DNA of 64,000 nucleotides from assembly GCA_020137815.1 (NCBI GenBank), contig CM035351.1, positions 6,572,001 to 6,636,000 of the forward strand. Reading direction: 5' to 3'. The translations under genes and the position numbers were made by a program. Shown here piece after piece: positions 290 to 55,574 of this stretch. This DNA is from Hormiphora californensis. Taxonomy: Eukaryota; Animalia; Ctenophora. Each line of letters begins with the position of its first letter. Within the stretch, counting starts at the first letter, position 1. The notes under the pieces were generated by a model. It had not been told where the DNA came from and searched no databases. It was given only the letters and a program-made list of their open reading frames with translations.

Positions 290-697
290 ACCTCCCACAC
301 ATTTTTACAATGATTTCATGCTTCAAAGGGTAATACATAGTTAGGGACAGCTGATTTATGACATTTATGAAACGTGGAAGGGCGTACCATTGAACCAGAA
401 ATGTTTAATTTCAAAATGCTAAGTGGGTGAAACCGGCCACAAGCCCAAGGGGGTTCCAGGGACTGAAACTCCTGGAGAGGTCACCACGCATGATACCCCC
501 TAAGCTACCCCCTTAATCCTTATCCTAGGAGGCTCCTAGGATAAGTTGGCGGGTCCCTAGGGCCCGACTCGCTATCCAAACGACTCTCAAAATCGGTCGA
601 ACCACCTTCAAACCCACAAAGAAGTTGTTCATAGGGTCAGGTCACTCATTGCTGACAGTCAAAACTTGGCAGCGCTTTTCAAGTTAGAAATTAAAAA

Positions 698-815
698 ATA
701 ATAATAATAATAATAATAATAAAGGGTTTTTAGTATACCGCTCAGTCCAGACAGGGCTGGATCATTGACATGAGTCCAACACTGCCCAGATTCAGAGCGG
801 TACACCAAGATTGTT
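698..815 (-). mobile_element. Short retroposon 3'-end fragment (L2/SINE-like stem-loop plus (TTA)n tail); copied at about 2016-2130
   Basis: (AAT)n tract next to a TACCGCTC...GAGCGGTA stem; a similar CCGCTCAG plus (CAT)n tail occurs at about 27720-27755. Confidence 0.4.
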
Positions 816-961
816 AATATCCTGACGGGCGCGATTATAATCTGGGTGCCTTGCAGCGATTTTATTTATTTATTCAATCTAATTTGTATACATTGAATCA
901 CAATCAACATACACGCCCCTTCTTGCGGGCAAAATCGGGCAGGTGAGTAGAACTTCGCTCC

Positions 962-1080
962 TAATAAAAGGCTGCAATAAAAGGCTGCAATAAAAGGCTG
1001 CAGAAAAAGGCTGCAATAAAAGGCTGCAATAAAAGGCTGCAGAAAAAGGCTGCAATAAAAGGCTGCAATAAAAGGCTGCA
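962..1080 (+). repeat. 13-bp tandem repeat (GCTGCAATAAAAG)n in the left TIR; inverted copy at about 4414-4531
   Basis: About 9 units visible in each arm, in opposite orientation. Confidence 0.95.
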
Positions 1081-1626
1081 AGGGATCACGTATCCAACCA
1101 GACTAAAGCGGGGGATAGACCGAATCGTCCTCCCCTAATAGTGTTTCGTATCACGTATCGGCTGTAGTGAGACCGAATCACCCTCCCCTAATTATAGTGA
1201 TTCGTGTCACGTATCCAACTAGACCATAGGCAATAGAGAGAGACCGAGATAGAGAGCGAGTACGAGTGAGAACTGAGAGTGTGAAAAATCAGAATCACGG
1301 TATGGTATCACGTACCATGGTATCCTCTAATGAAAAGCGGTTACCAATTGACAATGAGACCTCATCGGTCCCGATACGTGATTCTCTACCGCTATGTATT
1401 CTCCATTAGTCTTTCCGTATCAATCCACGATTCAGTAGAGGTAGTCAGTAACTACTGGGAGTATTGGTCTAATGAGGTAGGGTAGATCTATTGATTGAAC
1501 GTGTAGCACAATGACAGGTGGACCACCCAACCACTTAGTTCACCTATCGTAGTATTATGTGTGATTTGTGTACATAAAGACTATTGGCGAATAACGGTAG
1601 AAAATCAGTAATCACGTATTGGCACC

Positions 1627-1934
1627 CAGGGGTGTAGGAATAGGGGGGGCGAGGGGGGCGGCCGCCCCCCCCCCCCACTTTTGGCCAGGTTCGCCCCCTC
1701 ACTTTCGTCGCCAACAGTCAACACTCACTCCCAAATGACGAAATCATGACTTTTTTGGCTTTAAACCCTAAAATTTTTCTCGGCTCCGCTGTCGCTCCGC
1801 CCAATGTACAGTAAATGCAATGGAATAGGTGACTAAATCTTGCTCATAAATTTTTTTTCTTGGGCGCTGACCAGCGCTGTAATTGGTCACGTGACTTCGC
1901 CCCCCTCACTTGAAAATTCATTCCTACACCCCTG
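1627..1934. mobile_element. hAT-type MITE inside the Merlin-like element
   Basis: TIR CAGGGGTGTAGGAAT / ATTCCTACACCCCTG; 8-bp TSD TTGGCACC (1619-1626, 1935-1942). Confidence 0.9.
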
Positions 1935-3066
1935 TTGGCACCGATTAGGTCATGTGTCAGGTCACCTTGACAGTCAAAACTTGTCAGGTCGCCTTTTCAA
2001 GTTAGAAATTAAAAAATAATAATAATAATAATAATAAAGGGTTTTTAGTATACCGCTCAGTCCAGACAGGGCTGGATCATTGACATGAGTCCAACACTGC
2101 CCAGATTCAGAGCGGTACACCAAGATTGTTAATATCCTGACTCACAAAAAAAAGAAAAAAAAGAAAAAAAGAGTTGAACTTGAAAAAAATCATGATCAGG
2201 CTTGATACCGCGCGGCCGCGGTGTTTTGAAATTTATTAGCGCATTCCGTTTATTTTTCGGTTCGACCACACGTCTTGCGAGGCGCGGCGATGGCACCCAA
2301 AAAAAAACAAAAGCTTTGAGTTTTCAGTTTGGACTTCGTTTAACGTTTTCAGTTCGGACTTCGTTTGAAAAGCGCTGCCTTATCCCCCGCGGGGACCAGA
2401 AGCGTTTGTCAAGGACTTCGTTGGATACCCGCACACGTATTCCTTTTCTTGTTCAGTTTGGACTTCGTTTTGAAAAGCGCTGCCTTATCCCGCGACCAGC
2501 AGCATTTGCCATTTGCCAAGACTTCGTTTAACGTTTACACTTTACTAATAATAGTAACAGTTTATATCCCTCATGTGGTCATCTGACCGCAAAAAAACCC
2601 GCATATCACCAGTCAACAGAAAGCACAATTTTAAAGTCCGTAAAATTTTATTTTGAAGAATTTGGTTGAGAAACAGTGGAAAGAGAGCAAAAACAAAGTC
2701 CCGACGTACGTTTCTAATAATATCTCTGGTTCCTGATAACTGATCCCAGTAGCTGGTTGCACTGGGAAGTTCTTTCCAGTATCTTTCCGATACAACGGGA
2801 ATAAAGTTTCATCTATCTTATCACTGATAATGGATTCAATAAATAGCCCTTGAATCATGCAGTACAGGTTGGGCGGACCATTTCAAAACCTGGTGTGTTC
2901 TTGGTACAACAAACCGTCACTGTTAACAATTATTATTTTGAATTTTGTATGTATGTATTTCCTTCCAGGCCCTGTTAACACTTGAGACAGAATGATAATA
3001 CATTCCGATCATTTACATAGGATGTCGTTAAGGAGCGGATAACTTGGAATTCCACGACTATCAGTT

Positions 3067-4383
3067 ATGCTACCTAAACGTCCATCTCCAACGTGCTATC
3101 GGTTCCTGGTTCTTAGCAAGAAAACTAAGGCAATCATAGGAGTTAAAGGAAGTCACATAAAGGCAGCTCAACAGCTTTGTTCTAATCGTGGTTGCAAAAT
3201 AACCGTGTTTACAAGGCTTCCTGATGGCACAGAATTTCCTCCAAATGCGTCTGATCGGGTTTTGCAAGTTGATGTGTCATCCTTGGATGATTTGGTTGCA
3301 GTGATAGGCTACTTGACCCCTTTCTTCCAAAAGGTAGCTGAAACTGATGAAAGTCAGTTGAAACATGTGAAAGTTTTAGTTCCAGACTTTGTTTGTTCTT
3401 TGATAATCGGAGAACACGGAGAGAACATTCACCAGATGGAAAAAGATTTCAATTCCAGGGTTCATGTTTTCAATACGTCACTTCCTGGATCAAGCGAAAA
3501 TGTTGTGAAGGTTACAAACTTCGATACTGATCGACTAGCCGCGACCATTGGATGCATCTTCGAGTCAATACTGAGTGAGCGAACCATGTCAAGAGTGACC
3601 TTCTACAACCCCTTAAGTTGGGATCCAAAAGATAACGGTCACACGGGTAGTTACAACGATACCCAGTACAACACGACAAGTGAACATGTAGGATCAGAAG
3701 ATGGGAATTGGATTGAGGTTCGTGCCTTGGAGAACTCCTTGAATGAGGATGAAGTAGAAACGGGTGTAGAACTGAATTCAAGCGAAATTGCAATTATGCC
3801 AAATAGTTCCGAAGAAGAACCTGGACCATCGACTGGAAGTGGAGGTCAGCGAAAGTTTGGTGGGAGGAGAGATCTTCAACCACAAATAAACCCCAAAAAT
3901 ACAAACTTTGGTGAGCCATCGCTTGCAGAAAGAGAAAACTGGAGGAGTAGGGATACTTGTGAGGGATTAGGAGGCATCCGGCTAATGGATGACCAGGGAA
4001 GACGAAGGGGTGGTGGGGGAAGGCCTAGGAGCAATTTCAGAAATATAAGAGGAGGAAGAGGATGCGGTGTTTTCAGGGGTGGGGATAGAGAACATCGGTG
4101 TGTGGATAGAGGCCTTTTCAGAGGTGGTGCGAGATGTGATTACAGAGGAGTGTACAGAGGTGGGGAGGGTTATTATAGAGGTAGTTTTAGAGGAGGAGAG
4201 AGTTGTTACAGAGGAGGGAATATTAAAGTTTTCAGGGGCCACCCTGGTGGAAGGTGGACAGAAGGGCCGAGAGGATGGAATAATGGAAGGGGCAGGAGGG
4301 GCAGGAGAGCCAGGGAGAATCATAACGAGGAGAGAACTCGTCGTGGGAAGGTAAAGCCCCCCCGTGGTTCGTATCTCCGTTAG
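3067..4383 (+). CDS. Transposon-borne hnRNP K-like protein (2 KH domains, acidic linker, F/Y-RGG tail), 438 aa
   Basis: KH motifs AIIGVKGSHIK and SLIIGEHGENI; FYNPLSWD resembles hnRNP K YDPNFYD; RGG repeats; ORF intact, stop codon supplied by the element's right subterminal sequence. Confidence 0.8.
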   Translation: MLPKRPSPTCYRFLVLSKKTKAIIGVKGSHIKAAQQLCSNRGCKITVFTRLPDGTEFPPNASDRVLQVDVSSLDDLVAVIGYLTPFFQKVAETDESQLKHVKVLVPDFVCSLIIGEHGENIHQMEKDFNSRVHVFNTSLPGSSENVVKVTNFDTDRLAATIGCIFESILSERTMSRVTFYNPLSWDPKDNGHTGSYNDTQYNTTSEHVGSEDGNWIEVRALENSLNEDEVETGVELNSSEIAIMPNSSEEEPGPSTGSGGQRKFGGRRDLQPQINPKNTNFGEPSLAERENWRSRDTCEGLGGIRLMDDQGRRRGGGGRPRSNFRNIRGGRGCGVFRGGDREHRCVDRGLFRGGARCDYRGVYRGGEGYYRGSFRGGESCYRGGNIKVFRGHPGGRWTEGPRGWNNGRGRRGRRARENHNEERTRRGKVKPPRGSYLR

Positions 4384-5503
4384 TGCTTTAGTCCAGTTGG
4401 ATATGTGATCCATTGCAGCCTTTTATTGCAGCCTTTTATTGCAGCCTTTTATTGCAGCCTTTTATTGCAGCCTTTTTCTGCAGCCTTTTATTGCAGCCTT
4501 TTTCTGCAGCCTTTTATTGCAGCCTTTTATTAGGAGCGAAGTTCTACTCACCTGCCCAAAATCGGATATTCAATTCAATAAATTCAGACCTCCTGATAGA
4601 AATTAAGGCTATTTAGATAAAGATAGCAGTTATAAAATAGTTGATAATTAAAGTATAAAAGTATAAAAGTATAAAAGTTATTAATTAGATTAAGTTGAGT
4701 AATTGGATAATAAGGATAATATAGTAAGTAGACGATTAAATAATTAAGTGAGAATTAAGTGTAATAAATTAAATAAAAACTGTGGTAAAAAGATTAAAAA
4801 GCATGAGATGGCCGATGCAATGAGGGAATGAGAACAATTAATAAAGCTAACAGCCTCGAGATTAACGGTTAATAGTAAACTAATAAAACTGTGATAATAA
4901 TGATTAGACGGGGGATGGGTGGTGGGAAGGGTGATGAGAGGATAGAACTTAAAGGTGATATCAATAGTAATTAAAGCTAACATTAAAGCATGATATTAAT
5001 CTCGGTAGTTAAATAAAGGATAGGGCTACTGGGTTAGAAGATCATCTCCAAATGCTAGGCTATCATAGACTTCACTGACTAACATTCTAAACTTGTGTTT
5101 GAGGTTTCTATCTCTAGTGAAGATCAAAGGTATGTGAAAATTGGCATTGCAGACCGAAAGGGGTAGACACTGGTCCCTAAGAGCTGTCACTGCACCAGCC
5201 GCCGTACACTGGAATAGTTTATGGTATGGAGAGTCCAACTGCTCACCACATTCCAAGCAGTAGGGTTCTTCATTCGCCTGGCCACGACCCTGGACGGAAA
5301 ATGCAAAGTTCTGGAACCTTAAATTGTGTCCGTGTATGAAATCAAGGATCCTCGTTGAAGTTTCTCTGTTCATTGATCTTGTAACAAGTGGGCAAGCAGC
5401 AACGGCGCCCGTGTCCACATATTTTTCCAAGTCTTCAATCAATCCAGTTGTTTGCCCTCTTATAATGTCTGGAAGGGATGCTCGAACGTAGTCGTCCCAT
5501 ATC

Positions 5504-5776
5504 GGGCGCGATTATAATCTGGGTGCCTTGCAGCGTGTTTACAGGTGCGCGCTACCAAAAGAGTATACTTAGACCAACTTTTTTCAAACGGCTATAGCCA
5601 TGGAACCACTTGGCCGATTTGAGTAAACTAAACGGTATCAGTTAGAGAATCGATAGCCCTAACCGATAACCCCAAACCAAACCCTAACCAGACCCTAACG
5701 GATAGCCCTAACCCGTCGCGCGCGCCAAAACTACGAATTGTTAGCAATGAAAGGCACCCAGATTTTAACGTTTTCC
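5504..5776. mobile_element. Intact 273-bp MULE-like MITE, same family as 827-6310
   Basis: 9-bp TSD TCCCATATC (5495-5503, 5777-5785); imperfect TIRs; internal CCCTAA-rich repeats. Confidence 0.92.
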
Positions 5777-6310
5777 TCCCATATCTTGGAGAAGTATGCA
5801 TCCATATCTTCTTTGGAGTAGTGAAATCTTTCCGAATCATACGTCATGAGGTCGCACTGCCTTAAAAAGGACCGTCTTCCTGTCTCCCTCCCAAGGTCTC
5901 CATCCTGTTCACAATCTGCCCACTCGAGGTACCTCTTGACATTCGTCGTGTGATGGTAGAAGTAGTGACTAGGCTCGGACTCAATTTGGTAGAGTTTAGC
6001 AGTCATCGTGTCCCCTGCTTTTAGTCCTTTAAGGACGAATTTCGTTGCAGCGAGTTTACAGGTGCGCGCTACCAAAAAGAGTACACTTTTATTTCCTAGA
6101 CCGACTTTTTTCAAACGGCTATAGCCACGCAACCACATGACCGATTTGAGTAAACTAAACGGTATCTGATAGAGAATCGATAGCCCTAACCGATAACCCC
6201 AAACAAAACCCTAACCCGACCCTAACAACAGCCCTAACCCGTCTCGACCGCCAAAATCGATGAATTGTTAGCAATGGAAGGCACCCAGTCCCCAGATTTT
6301 AACGTTTTCC

Positions 6311-6770
6311 TATCCTGACTCACAAAAAAAAAGAAAAAAAAAGAAAAAAAGAGTTGAACTTGAAAAAAATCATGAGCAGGCTTGATACCGCGCGGCCGCG
6401 GTGTTTTGAAATTTATTAGCGCATTCCGTTTATTTTTCGGTTCGACCACACGTCTTGCGAGGCGCGGCGATGGCACCCAAAAAAACAAAAGCTTTGAGTT
6501 TTCAGTTTGGACTTCGTTTAACGTTTTCAGTTTGGACTTCGTTTGAAAAGCGCTGCCTTATCCTCCGCGGGGACCAGAAGCGTTTGTCAAGGACTTCGTT
6601 GGATACCCGCACACGTATTCCTTTTCTTGTTCAGTTTGGACTTCGTTTTGAAAAGCGCTGCCTTATCCCGCGACCAGCAGCATTTGCCATTTGCCAAGAC
6701 TTCGTTTAACGTTTACACTTTACTAATAATAGTAACAGTTTATATCCCTCATGTGGTCATCTGACCGCAA
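6311..6770. promoter_or_regulatory. Putative divergent promoter between UBR and the + strand gene cluster; its left part is at about 640-826
   Basis: Lies between head-to-head genes; CGCG-rich; TTGAAAAGCGCTGCC motif on + at about 6543 and 6648 and on - at about 668; the same motif pair recurs at 30150-30465. Confidence 0.5.
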
Positions 6771-7244
6771 AAAAATCCGCATATCACCAGTCAACAGAAA
6801 ACACAATTTTAAAGTCCGTAAAATTTTATTTTGAAGAATTTGGTTGAGAAACAGTGGAAAGAGAGCAAAAACAAAGTCCCGACGTACGTTTCTAATAATA
6901 TCTTTGGTTCCTGATAACTGATCCCAGTAGCTGGTTGCACTGGGAAGTTCTTTCCAGTATCTTTCCGATACAACGGGAATAAAGTTTCATCTATCTTATC
7001 ACTGATAATGGATTCAATAAATAGCCCTTGAATCATGCAGTACAGGTTGGGCGGACCATTTCAAAACCTGGTGTGTTCTTGGTACAACAAACCGTCACTG
7101 TTAACAATTATTATTTTGAATTTTGTATGTATGTATTTCCTTCCAGGCCCTGTTAACACTTGAGACAGAATGATAATACATTCCGATCATTTACATAGGA
7201 TGTCGTTAAGGAGCAGATAACTTGGAATTCCACGACTATCAGTT

Positions 7245-8630
7245 ATGCTACCTAAACGTCCATCTCCAACGTGCTATCGGTTCCTGGTTCTTAGCAAGAA
7301 AACTAAGGCAATCATAGGAGTTAAAGGAAGTCATATAAAGGCAGCTCAACAGCTTTGTTCTAATCGTGGTTGCAAAATAACCGTGTTTACAAGGCTTCCT
7401 GATGGTACAGAGTTTCCTCCAAATGCGTCTGATCGGGTTTTGCAAGTTGATGTGTCATCCTTGGATGATTTGGTTGCAGTGATAGGCTACTTGATGCCGT
7501 TCTTCCAAAAATCGGCTGAAACTGATGAAAGTCAGTTGAAACATGTGAAAGTTTTAGTTCCGGACTTTGTTTGTTCTTTGATAATCGGAGAACGCGGAGA
7601 GAACATTCACCAGATGGAAAACGATTTCAATTCCAGGGTTCATGTTTTTAATACTTCACTTCCTGGATCAAGCGAAAATATCGTGAAGGTTACAAACTTC
7701 GATGCTAATCAGCTTACTGCAACAATAAGGAACATCTTCGAGTCAATACTGAGTGAGCGAACCATTTCAAATGTAGCCTTCTACAACCCCTTAAGATGGG
7801 ATCCGAAAACCTACGGTCACACGGGCAGTTACAACGATACCCAGTTCCAGAATATCACGGAACAGGAAGAATCGGAAGAAGAGGATTCGACTGAGGAAGA
7901 TTGCGAATCTCTGAATTCTTTGAATGATGATGTTGTTGATGATGAAGCAACAGATGGCGAACAGGAATCAAGTGAAGTTGGGGATGTACTAGATAATCCT
8001 GAAGAGCCTGATGATGAAGTGGTAGAAACGGATGATGAAGAGGAACAAAACAAAATCGCAGAGATATCTGAAAGTTCTGAAGAGCCCGGACCATCAACTG
8101 CACGTGGGGGTCTACGGACATTTGGTGGAAGGAGAGACCAACCACTGCACCCTGAAAATGTAGATGGATCTAGGCTGGCGGAAAGAGAAAGGGGCAACTC
8201 GAAACGCAGGGGTGGTAGAAGAGGAGGGAGAGGACGACCAAGAAGTGGAATCAGGGGAGAACCGAGGGGAGGAACTAGAGGGGAGCCGGTAGGACCATCG
8301 ATGGGAGGATCGATTGGAGCACTGATTGGGGGACCGAGAGGAGGAACTAGAGGAGCCCCGAGGGGAGGACACAGGCGAGGACACAGGGGTGGAGCTAGAG
8401 GAGGGCCAGGAGGACCACCAAGAGAGGAATCAAGTGGAGCACCACAAGAACCACCAAGCAGAGGAATTAGAGGAGGGACTAGCGGCGCACGGAGGGGACG
8501 GAGTAATAGAGGAGGACGCGGTTTGGTGAACCAAGGTGTGGAGAGAACTCGTCGGGATAGCGGTCGTAGAAGGGATGATATTGATAGAGAGAGGGGAAGT
8601 GTGGTACTTGGTTCACCCCCAAACATTTAA
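7245..8630 (+). CDS. hnRNP K-like KH-KH-acidic-RGG protein, chromosomal copy, 461 aa, intronless CDS
   Basis: Same two KH domains (GVKG, GERG loops), long D/E tract and G/P/R-rich RGG tail; lacks a third KH domain. Confidence 0.85.
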   Translation: MLPKRPSPTCYRFLVLSKKTKAIIGVKGSHIKAAQQLCSNRGCKITVFTRLPDGTEFPPNASDRVLQVDVSSLDDLVAVIGYLMPFFQKSAETDESQLKHVKVLVPDFVCSLIIGERGENIHQMENDFNSRVHVFNTSLPGSSENIVKVTNFDANQLTATIRNIFESILSERTISNVAFYNPLRWDPKTYGHTGSYNDTQFQNITEQEESEEEDSTEEDCESLNSLNDDVVDDEATDGEQESSEVGDVLDNPEEPDDEVVETDDEEEQNKIAEISESSEEPGPSTARGGLRTFGGRRDQPLHPENVDGSRLAERERGNSKRRGGRRGGRGRPRSGIRGEPRGGTRGEPVGPSMGGSIGALIGGPRGGTRGAPRGGHRRGHRGGARGGPGGPPREESSGAPQEPPSRGIRGGTSGARRGRSNRGGRGLVNQGVERTRRDSGRRRDDIDRERGSVVLGSPPNI

Positions 8631-53346: not shown

Positions 53347-54902
53347 GTGGGCCACGGATTGTTGGTAAGGGTTAGCGAGTTGTCCCGTCAAAACGGTGAT
53401 AGTTGCGAGAATAAAAATCATGGGAGCACTCTGGATCAATTTCTTGGTAACTTTTTCCATAATTTTTTGTCAAAAATTTGAAAATTCATTTTTCATTCCT
53501 TCATTCATTTCTCGTTCATTTATGATGTGAGCATCCTAATTTTCCATCATGGTGCTATTTTTCTTTGGCTTGAATTTATCTTTCCAATGAACACCATAAA
53601 AATGAAATTGAAGCACCAGGTCACGTTGCAGTTGAGAAAATGCTCATGCATGATTTTGGCTCTTCCTGCGACTTTCAATGAGCTGTATCACGGCTCCCTT
53701 TTGTTCAATCTTTTTCAAAATTTGGGAGAACATTGGATAAACAAAGATCTTTGCTCACAAGAAAAATCAAGGTCAAAACTCAAAGTTCATTTTTCATTTT
53801 TGGTAGTTCATTCCACCCATTCAGGAACTAACATCCCTAAAGTCATGAAAAGTTTTGGGTTTTGTTTGGCCTATGCTCTGCAATGCCAGAGAGGTGTAGT
53901 AGCGTGTTTCCGGGCTAGTTTTTGGGTGTCCATGTGATCATGATGATACCTGACACCTTATTTGGGCCATAATTAAGAGATTTTCTCAAGTTGAAGCATG
54001 TGACTTGGGTTTTCTGTGATTGATATCGTGAAACAATGTTATGGGATCCCATAGCACCCCTAAAATGATGATTAATTCAACAAAATGAGTTGATTTATTA
54101 TTGAAAAGATTCAAACCGAAGACAAACTCAACTAAACGAACAATTTCGATCATAAATCAACTCATTTTGTTGAATTAATCATCATTTTAGGGGTGCTATG
54201 GGATCCCATAACATTGTTTCACGATATCAATCACAGAAAACCCAAGTCACATGCTTCAACTTGAGAAAATCGCTTAATTATGGCCCAAATAAGGTGTCAG
54301 ATATCATCATGATCACATGGACACCCAAAAACTAGCCCGGAAACACGCTACTACACCTCTCTGGCATTGCAGAGCATAGGCCAAACAAAACCCAAAACTT
54401 TTCATGACTTTAGGGATGTTAGTTCCTGCATGAGTGGAATGAACTACCAAAAATGAAAAATGAACTTTGAGTTTTGACCTTGATTTTTCTTGTGAGCAAA
54501 GATCTTTGTTTATCCAATGTTAACCCAAATTTTGAAAAATATTGAACAAAAGGGAGCCGTGATACAGCTCATTGAAAGTCGCAGGAAGAGCCAAAATCAT
54601 GCATGAGCATTTTCTCAACTGCAACGTGACCTGGTGCTTCAATTTCATTTTTATGGTGTTCGTTGGAAAGATAAATTCAAGCCAAAGAAAAATAGCACCA
54701 TGATGGAAAATTAGGATGCTCACATCATAAATGAACGAGAAATGAATGAAGGAATGAAAATGAATTTTCGAATTTTTGACAAAAAATTATGGAAAAAGTT
54801 ACCAAGAAATTGATCCAGAGTGCTCCCATGATTTTTATTCTCGCAACTATCACCGTTTTGACGGGACAACTCGCTAACCCTTACCAACAATCCGTGGCCC
54901 AC
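53347..54902. mobile_element. 1.55-kb foldback element (about 750-bp arms)
   Basis: GTGGGCCACGGATTGTTGGTAAGGG... mirrored with a few mismatches; spacer about 54100-54150; no clear TSD. Confidence 0.85.
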
Positions 54903-55574
54903 CTTGTATAAACCTCCCGGTATATTTGTGTGACAGAAAAGTGGTCAGCTGAAGACGGTTTATAATGCGAGATTGTGCCAGGAACTGGCAGTCTCTGGAG
55001 AGACAAGAAGAGAGATGAATGATGCTCTCTGTATCTTTCTCAATTATTAATTCTGAATCTTTTTACCACAGTCTTTAGAATCTGTTTATAAGTTCTTGAT
55101 TTAATGTTACTTAAAAAAATCTGAGGTTTTTCTCTTTGGAGTCGATGAAAGGAAGCCGGAGAGATCTGTCGAGGATCTGTCTGCTGGCGAAAGAAAGTGT
55201 GTTCAGATGGGGTCCACGGTGCCAGACAGGGAGAGAGAGGGAGGCAGTCGACTGCAGTCGCTCTTCTAACCTCTTTACAATACATGAGTTAAAACCCGTG
55301 TGAAGTTGTCGCGTTTATGATAACCCTTTCCGGCTTCCAATGGCCGGTCCATTGAACCAAATAAAAGGTGTCTGTTTTTAGAAATATCAAAAATAAATAA
55401 TAAAATTGATGTATCAATACTGGTGTGCGTCTAGCACTAACATGTGTATGTGACAACAATGCACTTTAGTAAATAACTTACATATCTTCTCTCTAAAGCA
55501 TGCACATTACAACAAACTATACTACTGTACCCCTATAACATTTCCAAAACTTGTTAATATATCACAGTCCCATA

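What the first reader, a model, noticed from the sequence alone, without database searches (positions are those of the whole stretch)
938..4556. Pack-type Merlin-like transposon carrying a complete promoter plus hnRNP K-like KH/RGG gene
Seen: a 3.6-kb element with about 170-bp TIRs (GG ends, internal 13-bp tandem repeats) and an exact 8-bp TSD, with no transposase. Its cargo (about 1956-4345) is host DNA: the upstream region and an uninterrupted 438-aa copy of the neighbouring KH gene. Known: GG ends with an 8-9 bp TSD fit Merlin/IS1016, and gene capture is best known for plant Pack-MULE/CACTA and Helitrons, usually as fragments. Inference: a mobile vehicle that amplifies a full, potentially expressed RNA-binding protein gene in an animal genome, possibly acting on TE RNA or silencing.
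Basis: partly seen in the sequence, partly recalled or inferred. Interest (0 to 1): 0.9.

Follow-up and report, generated by a model that had tools for sequence, protein, structure and literature searches.

The report
Single-copy Merlin transposon carrying KH gene
A small non-autonomous Merlin DNA transposon has had its core replaced by 2.4 kb of host DNA holding the upstream region and an almost complete KH/RGG RNA-binding gene, but it exists only once in the genome, so it is a one-off gene capture and not a gene-amplifying vehicle.

Summary
Window 938-4556 is bounded by 173-nt inverted repeats (93%), GG/CC ends, 13-bp repeat arrays and an exact 8-bp duplication, CAAAATCG.

The Merlin call is supported:
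- About 98 elements share the 24-nt terminus, and about 30 checked copies have 8-bp duplications.
- A 3,842-bp relative with the same right terminus carries a DDE_Tnp_IS1595 transposase fragment.

The element is a roughly 1.16-kb MITE. Its core is replaced by host DNA (1953-4349): 1.1 kb of upstream region plus 426 codons of a two-KH/RGG gene. The last 12 codons and the stop come from filler and transposon sequence.

The amplification and function inference is not supported:
- The cargo occurs once. The only relative is the neighbouring gene.
- Other long family members carry nested repeats, not genes.
- Expression could not be tested.

The cargo is not a plain copy of the neighbour. Identity is 99% upstream, then decays to unalignable tails. 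This indicates an old paralogue with recent 5' gene conversion, whose free-standing source is absent from the assembly.

The cargo keeps the uninterrupted form of the site that the surrounding MITE/LINE nest splits upstream of the neighbour. The scan also noted this nest under a separate finding.

This is a new member of the known animal Pack-TIR kind. Interest is moderate.

The parts
930..937 (.). Left target-site duplication CAAAATCG
   Evidence: identical to 4557-4564
938..1626 (+). Left arm of the Merlin MITE. Holds the 173-nt TIR 938-1110, the 13-bp array 963-1081 and the subterminal repeats. Equals canonical positions 1-703.
   Evidence: 96.5% identical to the nearest copies, and the first 363 nt are 100% identical to two other copies
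1627..1934 (.). Nested hAT-like MITE with CAGGGGTGTAGGAAT termini; duplication TTGGCACC at 1619-1626 and 1935-1942
   Evidence: canonical family copies read straight through this site
1943..1952 (+). Last 10 nt of canonical MITE sequence (GATTAGGTCA) before the cargo; left junction with 3-nt microhomology TCA
1953..4349 (+). Captured host DNA, about 2.4 kb. It replaces roughly canonical positions 714-960 of the MITE.
2011..2145 (-). 5'-truncated retroposon 3' end ('R') with an (ATT)n tail, inside the cargo's upstream region. The same fragment lies at 696-826 plus 6312-6323.
   Evidence: at least 40 genomic copies at 98-100% identity
2146..3066 (+). Upstream region of the gene; 10 mismatches in 924 aligned columns against the neighbour's 6323-7244
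3067..4383 (+). Open frame of 438 codons ('KH-A'): two KH domains and an aromatic RGG tail. Codons 1-426 are host. Codons 427-438 and the stop come from the junction, filler and transposon sequence.
4350..4367 (.). Filler of unknown origin at the right junction
4368..4556 (+). Right arm of the Merlin MITE (TIR 4385-4556, 13-bp array 4412-4531). The inverted subterminal repeats of the canonical element are missing.
   Evidence: 1 mismatch in 177 nt against four other copies
4557..4564 (.). Right target-site duplication CAAAATCG
859..6044 (-). Context: 5'-truncated non-LTR-retrotransposon-like fragment that hosts the element (its own sequence is 859-937, 4565-5503 and 5786-6044); duplication TTGCAGCG at 851-858 and 6045-6052
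   Evidence: a joint 938->4573 at multi-copy depth shows other copies are uninterrupted
827..6311 (.). Context: outer 'Y' MITE (827-858 plus 6053-6311), split by the retrotransposon. Duplication ATCCTGAC at 819-826 and 6312-6319. It interrupts the neighbour's upstream region. A second copy Y' lies at 5504-5777 (duplication CCCATATC).
6320..8630 (+). Neighbouring paralogue 'KH-B': upstream region 6320-7244 and ORF 7245-8630 (461 aa)

Best explanation
Window 938-4556 is a single-copy Pack-type derivative of an abundant Merlin MITE family with about 98 copies and a canonical length of about 1.16 kb.

Structure (shown):
- About 250 bp of the MITE core is replaced by 2.4 kb of host DNA. This holds 1.1 kb of upstream region, including a truncated retroposon, and codons 1-426 of an intronless two-KH/RGG gene (KH-A).
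- The frame is closed by 12 codons and a stop from filler and transposon sequence.
- The junctions are internal to the MITE. One has a 3-nt microhomology and the other an 18-nt filler.

Mechanism (inferred): these junctions are the signature of double-strand-break or gap repair with template switching, as proposed for animal Pack-TIRs.

Setting (shown): the unit sits with an exact 8-bp duplication inside a retrotransposon fragment. That fragment sits inside a MITE inserted 925 bp upstream of the paralogue KH-B.

Origin of the cargo (inferred):
- The cargo keeps the uninterrupted form of that insertion site, and its 3' half is unalignable with KH-B. So it was not copied from today's neighbouring locus.
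- KH-A is an older paralogue whose 5' 1.3 kb was homogenised with KH-B by gene conversion about 1% divergence ago.
- Its free-standing source is no longer in the assembly. It has been lost, or it is absent from this haplotype.

Status:
- Shown: the element is not amplified.
- Unresolved: whether the loaded element itself ever jumped, or a plain MITE was filled in place from a now-absent source.
- Untested: whether KH-A is expressed.
For: Ends and family:
- TIR and duplication.
- 98 forward and 97 reverse termini against 0 controls.
- Perfect 8-bp duplications in 12 of 12 copies. In a second, partly overlapping set, 17 of 20 were perfect and 2 more differed at one base.
- Canonical copies align to 938-1626 and to 4368/4380-4556 and lack the cargo.

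Merlin superfamily:
- PF12762 match at C1:577425-577649 (E 1.2e-9; 8.8e-12).
- The match lies inside a 3,842-bp element. Its left end carries the same 13-bp repeats and a diverged terminus, and its right terminus is the exact 24-mer.
- The defining features are listed in PMC8101967.

Single copy:
- DNA search with 3000-4556 finds only itself and the neighbour.
- Protein search finds only distant paralogues, 31-33% identical.
- Contig depth over the cargo-specific part is 25.9, against 47-62 where the two paralogues are identical.

Real, not an artefact: cargo-specific contigs also occur in an independent sample, X5, with 4 SNPs.

Old paralogue plus gene conversion:
- Identity is 99% over 2144-3142, falls to 82% by 3640, and is unalignable beyond.
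- Upstream mismatches are 10 in 924. dS is 0.10 for codons 1-100 and 0.28-0.34 for codons 100-200.
- Both copies share the same truncated young retroposon at the same point.

Nest: four exact 8-bp duplications, and removing the Y' copy restores a 244-aa frame.

Purifying selection: dN/dS is 0.26 over the KH region.

Fit to the literature: the pattern matches single-copy, cis-biased, microhomology-bearing animal Pack-TIRs (PMC8277862).
Against: - No free-standing source gene for the KH-A tail exists in the assembly, so 'capture' of that paralogue is inferred and not shown.
- The transposon arms are only 0.6-1.6% from their nearest relatives, while the tails are saturated. This forces either a lost source or an unusual history.
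- The transposase-bearing relative has a diverged left terminus and no matching duplication, and its transposase lies in three reading frames. I searched those pieces separately and did not join them, so whether it is intact is unknown.
- No RNA evidence: the one presumed RNA run laid nothing anywhere on the stretch.
- The short contigs do not demonstrably bridge the cargo-to-arm junctions.
Confidence: 0.75

Rival explanations
1. One reading: an active Pack-Merlin vehicle that spreads and amplifies an expressed RNA-binding gene, perhaps acting on TE RNA or silencing.
For: The frame is intact and 1.1 kb of upstream region is carried along. The family is young and abundant. dN/dS is 0.26.
Against: The cargo is present once in 110.7 Mb. 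Other long copies hold LINE, foldback or tandem-repeat inserts, not genes. There are no expression data. The right arm lacks the subterminal repeats. Nothing links the protein to TE control.
Confidence: 0.05
2. Transposition-independent gap filling in place, copying directly from the neighbouring KH-B locus 1.8 kb downstream. This is the commonest route for single-copy animal Pack-TIRs.
For: The parent-like gene lies within 5 kb in cis, the breakpoints are internal, and there is microhomology (PMC8277862). The 5' 1 kb is 99% identical.
Against: When a MITE sat in this retrotransposon fragment, the cis template was already split by the same nest. Yet the cargo has the exact uninterrupted junction with one ATCCTGAC. 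The 3' 700 bp is unalignable with KH-B, and no other template exists in the genome.
Confidence: 0.12
3. Assembly artefact: a chimeric join of a MITE and a collapsed tandem paralogue.
For: The region is repeat-rich. Contigs break at repeats, and no listed contig demonstrably bridges the junctions.
Against: There are exact 8-bp duplications and clean canonical breakpoints. Depth over the cargo-specific part is single-copy, and that part is present in a second sample. One 1,273-letter X1 contig starts at 3558, and its length would carry it past the right end, but only its first 786 letters were laid.
Confidence: 0.03
4. The element belongs to another 8-bp-duplication superfamily (hAT or P), or to MULE, and not to Merlin.
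For: An 8-bp duplication alone also fits hAT. Long TIRs and gene capture recall MULEs.
Against: The termini are GG, not hAT-type. An IS1595-type DDE fragment lies inside a relative that shares the terminus, the 13-bp repeats and the subterminal repeats. All checked duplications are 8 bp, not 9-10.
Confidence: 0.05

Closest known systems
Animal Pack-TIRs (Tan et al. 2021, PMC8277862)
   Same: Host sequence lies between the ends of a non-autonomous TIR transposon. It is single-copy, within 5 kb of a parent-like gene, and has internal breakpoints with microhomology or filler. These features point to gap repair with template switching.
   Different: - The cargo is about 2.4 kb, holding a promoter-bearing upstream region and 426 codons, against a median of 224 bp.
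- The superfamily is Merlin. In that survey 87% were hAT or Tc/mariner, and in the text held here 'Merlin' appears only as a column of TE counts.
- The exact parent of the 3' half is missing from the genome.
Pack-MULEs / Pack-TYPE elements of plants (PMC8903248)
   Same: Long TIRs, no transposase and captured genic DNA.
   Different: Those are often multicopy and carry fragments, sometimes from several genes, with 9-10-bp duplications. This one has a single near-complete gene, a single copy and 8-bp duplications, in a different superfamily and kingdom.
Ssk-FB4 of Drosophila melanogaster (PMC8277862)
   Same: A whole coding gene carried between long inverted repeats of a non-autonomous element.
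   Different: Ssk-FB4 is multicopy, transposes repeatedly and has peptide support. Here there is one copy and no expression evidence.
Merlin MITEs and autonomous Merlin elements (Feschotte 2004, as summarised in PMC8101967)
   Same: GG termini, 8-bp duplication, a TIR within the 24-462 bp range, and a DDE_Tnp_IS1595 partner.
   Different: This one carries a host gene. The 13-bp tandem arrays inside the TIR are a family-specific feature.

Membership tests
Merlin superfamily (DNA transposon) | Conserved terminal 5'-GG-3' (PMC8101967) | tested here: met
   GGCAGGTGAG... at 938 and ...CTCACCTGCC at 4556. The same 24-mer is found 195 times.
Merlin superfamily (DNA transposon) | 8- or 9-bp target-site duplication | tested here: met
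   CAAAATCG here. Perfect 8-bp duplications in 12 of 12 copies and in 17 of 20 copies of a second, partly overlapping set.
Merlin superfamily (DNA transposon) | TIRs of 24-462 bp | tested here: met
   173 nt at 93%.
Merlin superfamily (DNA transposon) | An autonomous partner with the same ends encodes a DDE_Tnp_IS1595 transposase | tested here: met
   PF12762 fragment (E 8.8e-12) inside C1:576151-579992. That element has the exact right terminus, the same 13-bp repeats and the same subterminal repeats.
Pack-TIR (transduplicating TIR element) | Non-TE host sequence between the two ends of a non-autonomous element | tested here: met
   1953-4349 is absent from canonical copies and holds a KH_1 gene and its upstream region.
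Pack-TIR (transduplicating TIR element) | An identifiable parental copy not itself flanked by the TE | tested here: inconclusive
   The neighbour matches at 95% over 1.6 kb, but its 3' half is unalignable. No other source is in the genome.
Amplifying (multicopy) Pack element | Several copies of the same cargo at different sites with different duplications | tested here: not met
   The cargo occurs once.
Expressed or functional Pack gene | Copy-specific transcripts | tested here: inconclusive
hnRNP K family | Three KH domains with the RGG/KI region between KH2 and KH3, and specific sequence kinship | tested here: not met
   One significant KH_1 (aa 101-155), plus an N-terminal GxxG KH-like region seen by eye. 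The RGG region is C-terminal. The best solved-structure sequence matches are Nova-1 (E 2.8e-5) and PCBP2.
hAT superfamily (considered) | 8-bp duplication with hAT-type termini and a hAT transposase partner | tested here: not met
   The 8-bp duplication fits, but the termini are GG and the partner is IS1595-type. The nested MITE at 1627-1934 has CAGGGG termini, which I recall as the hAT type; I did not test this.

The most novel reading that the evidence does not exclude
A Merlin MITE has become the only genomic carrier of a selectively maintained, promoter-bearing KH/RGG paralogue whose original locus has been lost. A functional host gene would then reside on, and could be moved by, a DNA transposon in what is probably a ctenophore. 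This would be the first gene-scale, functional Pack-Merlin.
Probability: 0.25. Interest if true: 0.65.

Novelty: new member of a known kind. Interest (0 to 1): 0.45.

Why it matters
Gene capture by cut-and-paste transposons in animals is documented mostly as short, non-coding or fragmentary pieces. Captures of a whole gene together with its upstream region are very rare.

This case extends the phenomenon in three ways:
- to the Merlin superfamily;
- to a compact genome that is probably a ctenophore's;
- to a cargo large enough to be a working gene.

It also gives a dated, nested record of the events around one locus: retroposon, gene conversion, MITE, LINE, then the Pack element. All of them fall within roughly 1-2% divergence.

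If the captured paralogue is expressed and its source is truly lost, it would be a natural example of a host gene relocated onto a mobile element.

Tried and rejected
**Searches that gave nothing**
- Two word-based protein searches with KH-A, whole and residues 1-205, found nothing, not even the query itself. A full HMMER scan then found about 20 unnamed relatives at E < 1e-10, 24-45% identical to the query, plus one 97-aa fragment 91% identical to it. None carries a name, so they could not serve as an outgroup.
- Pfam found nothing on the retrotransposon-like ORFs at 5029-5442 and 5734-6138. They do not match the LINE reverse transcriptases nested in other copies. Its class therefore rests on 5' truncation, the (AATA)n tail, a cysteine/histidine motif seen by eye near the C-terminus, and copy number.
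- No large tandem repeat explains the rewritten tails.

Only the first 100 of 195 termini could be paired, and the other Merlin transposase loci were seen with short flanks only.

**Readings considered and rejected**
- Capture of a retrocopy. The cargo includes 1.1 kb of upstream DNA and a retroposon.
- A composite of two whole MITEs. The two arms add up to a single canonical element.
- KH as a transposon-encoded gene. Paralogues lie outside TEs.

**Checks on other Merlin families and copies**
- The other Merlin families in this genome share no ends with this one.
- The inserts in the other long family copies proved to be a foldback-like TE (L065; L066) and tandem repeats (L064).
Full report
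**1. The observation**

- The arms 937-1109 and 4385-4557 are 173 nt long and 93% complementary.
- Each arm holds a 13-bp array of 9.2 units, at 963-1081 and 4412-4531.
- The ends read GGCAGGTGAG... and ...CTCACCTGCC.
- CAAAATCG stands directly outside both ends, at 930-937 and 4557-4564.
- Inside, the only recognisable protein is the 438-codon frame 3067-4383 with a KH_1 domain. There is no transposase.

**2. A large, young family**

The window is C2:6572001-6636000 of a 110.69-Mb assembly in 45 contigs.
- The 24-nt terminus occurs 98 times forward and 97 times reverse with up to 2 mismatches. The reversed control gives 0.
- Paired termini are mostly 1.1-1.4 kb apart.
- I fetched two partly overlapping sets of copies. 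In the first, 12 of 12 have perfect 8-bp duplications. In the second, 17 of 20 are perfect, 2 differ at one base and 1 has none.
- The canonical element is 1,159-1,185 bp (L068, L069). It aligns to window 938-1626 at 96.4% and to 4380-4556 at 99.4%. Its positions 704-982 have no BLAST match in ours; direct comparison (section 4) narrows the missing core to about 714-960.
- The first 363 nt of our left arm are 100% identical to two other copies. Over the whole arms the nearest copies differ by 11 mismatches in 699 nt and 1 in 177 nt.

**3. Superfamily**

- A genome search with PF12762 (DDE_Tnp_IS1595) gave nine loci. Only one, C1:577425-577649, shares sequence with our element.
- Upstream of that match lies a diverged left terminus followed by the same AAAAGGCTGCA-type 13-bp repeats. 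Downstream lie the family's subterminal repeats in inverted orientation.
- The exact 24-nt terminus closes the unit at C1:579992, so the element is 3,842 bp.
- The transposase-like sequence lies in three open pieces in three frames. I searched them separately, and only the third scores (E 8.8e-12).
- A 3,492-bp element at C2:781234-784725 is a deletion derivative lacking that region.
That agrees in size with what I found independently.
- GG termini, 8-9-bp duplications, 24-462-bp TIRs and this DDE domain are the defining Merlin features (PMC8101967). All four are met.

**4. Anatomy of the loaded element**

- *Left arm.* Canonical sequence runs 938-1626. It is interrupted by a 308-bp MITE with CAGGGGTGTAGGAAT termini (1627-1934; duplication TTGGCACC at 1619-1626 and 1935-1942). 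It resumes for 10 nt (1943-1952, GATTAGGTCA) and then stops.
- *Left junction.* Host homology begins at 1953 and shares TCA with the transposon.
- *Right junction.* Homology to the neighbouring gene ends at about 4345-4349, within ...GAGAGAACTCGTCG(T)GGGA. Then come 18 nt of filler (4350-4367) and canonical right-arm sequence from 4368.
- *Net effect.* One MITE has lost about 250 bp of its core, including the right-hand subterminal repeats, and gained 2.4 kb.
- *Mechanism.* Internal breakpoints, microhomology and filler are what Tan et al. describe for gap repair with template switching (PMC8277862). This step is inferred, not shown.

**5. The cargo**

- *Layout.* 1953-2010 is unique upstream DNA. 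2011-2145 is a 5'-truncated retroposon end with an (ATT)n tail, of which at least 40 copies at 98-100% identity exist. 2146-3066 is further upstream region. 3067-4383 is the open frame.
- *Truncation.* Compared with the neighbour (461 aa, 7245-8630), the cargo lacks the last 24 or so codons, the stop and the 3' UTR. Codons 427-438 and the stop are junction, filler and transposon sequence. The first AATAAA after the stop is at 4577, just outside the element.
- *Protein.* There is a significant KH_1 domain at aa 101-155. By eye, an N-terminal KH-like region carries a GxxG motif, and the C-terminal tail is rich in RGG. The best solved-structure sequence matches are weak, to Nova-1 (E 2.8e-5) and PCBP2. 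'hnRNP K-like' is therefore not established.

**6. Not amplified**

- DNA search with 3000-4556 finds the coding part only at itself and, for its first 719 nt, at the neighbour.
- The neighbour's tail is unique too.
- A protein search finds only distant paralogues, 26-34% identical, on C1, C8 and C2.
- In contigs of the presumed source sample, depth over 3558-4343 is 25.9. It is 47-62 where the two paralogues are identical. That fits one copy each.
- Other long family members carry LINE reverse transcriptases (L061, L063), foldback-like TEs (L065; L066, which equals window 53347-54908) or tandem repeats (L064).
- No second gene-bearing copy was seen. Only the first 100 of the 195 termini were listed, and about 40 copies were inspected directly.

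**7. Not a simple copy of the neighbour**

- Identity to the neighbour is 96-100% per 100-nt window from 2144 to 3142. It then runs 97, 93, 98, 88, 82 and 67%, and is unalignable beyond.
- The upstream non-coding part has 10 mismatches in 924 columns. Synonymous divergence is 0.10 in codons 1-100 and 0.28-0.34 in codons 100-200.
- Non-coding DNA more alike than synonymous sites, with a gradient, points to gene conversion between old paralogues rather than to constraint.
- The tails share a layout: an acidic linker, EEPGPST, FGGRRD, LAERE, an RGG region, and ERTRR with 14 identical nucleotides. But they are saturated, and no recent tandem expansion explains this.
- Both copies contain the same young retroposon, truncated at the same base. 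So the shared 5' block is recent, at roughly 1% divergence, similar to the divergence of the transposon arms.
- If the genome is Hormiphora californensis, that is within its reported heterozygosity of about 2-3% (PMC8527503). I infer that identity from 110 Mb, 44 scaffolds and 13 chromosome-scale pieces.
- dN/dS over the KH region is 0.26. Purifying selection has therefore acted on at least one lineage.

**8. The nest and what it implies**

- Upstream of the neighbour, the retroposon end ...ATCCTGAC (819-826) is followed by a MITE 'Y' (827-858 plus 6053-6311). After Y, ATCCTGAC recurs (6312-6319) and the neighbour's upstream region continues.
- Y is itself split by a 5'-truncated retrotransposon-like fragment on the minus strand (859-6044; duplication TTGCAGCG).
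- That fragment holds our element and a second Y copy (5504-5777; duplication CCCATATC). Removing them restores a 244-aa frame and an (AATA)n tail.
- A joint 938->4573 at multi-copy depth in three runs shows that other copies of that retrotransposon are uninterrupted at this site.
- The cargo carries ...ATCCTGAC-TCACAAAA... uninterrupted. A cis copy from today's neighbour is therefore excluded: it would need two switches landing exactly on the duplication, and the tail does not match either.
- So a separate KH-A source with an intact upstream region existed. It was most likely a nearby tandem paralogue, given the gene conversion and the cis bias of such captures. It is now absent from the assembly.
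- Whether the loaded unit jumped here, or a plain MITE was filled here from that source, cannot be told. The duplication fits both.

**9. Independent support and limits**

- A second sample (X5, another study) holds cargo-specific contigs 3729-3869 and 3997-4343 with four SNPs, two synonymous and two not.
- The one presumed RNA run laid nothing anywhere, so expression is untested.

**10. Verdict**

The structure and the Merlin call are confirmed. The 'vehicle that amplifies an expressed gene' reading is not.

This is a new member of the known animal Pack-TIR kind. It is unusual for three reasons: its superfamily, its gene-sized cargo with upstream region, and the absence of a free source copy.

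Noticed in passing
window 827-858 + 6053-6311, and 5504-5777: 'Y' MITE of about 275 bp with 8-bp duplications. In the contig runs its summed depth is thousands of times the single-copy depth, so it may be the most abundant element seen on this stretch.
   Followed up: partly
window 1627-1934: A 308-bp MITE with CAGGGGTGTAGGAAT termini and duplication TTGGCACC, nested in the Merlin left arm 18 nt from the cargo junction.
   Followed up: partly
window 696-826 and 2011-2145; L087, L088: 3' end of a retroposon with an (ATT)n tail, at least 40 copies at 98-100% identity. The two KH upstream regions share one copy truncated at the same base.
   Followed up: partly
window 53347-54908; also L066 827-2412: A 1.56-kb element that matches itself in both orientations (99% and 96.5%), foldback-like. 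It is also nested inside another Merlin MITE copy.
   Followed up: no
L065 1393-2706 (C3:3186456-3187771): A 1.3-kb palindromic repeat with more than 1,000 first-look candidates in the genome and copies 94-99% identical to the query.
   Followed up: no
G000 C1:576151-579992 (L079 + L082) and C2:781234-784725 (L062): A Merlin element of 3,842 bp bearing a transposase, and its 3,492-bp deletion derivative. They share a 1.2-kb region between the inverted subterminal repeats and the right TIR. The derivative has 1.19 kb of extra sequence of unknown origin.
   Followed up: partly
window 2981-3067: In sample X5, one contig leaves the reference at 2981 and another joins it exactly at the ATG (3067). 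Both run on into unlike sequence. This may be a structural variant upstream of the start codon in that sample, or a contig artefact.
   Followed up: no
G000 C1:8929237-8931469 and C8:6270416-6271316: Distant paralogues of the two-KH protein, 26-34% identical. The two on C1 lie 2 kb apart on the same strand, with open frames of 434 and 475 aa.
   Followed up: no
window 3526-3543: Eight differences between the two paralogues fall within 18 nt (aa 153-160, DTDRLAAT against DANQLTAT). This is a cluster, not scattered substitutions.
   Followed up: no
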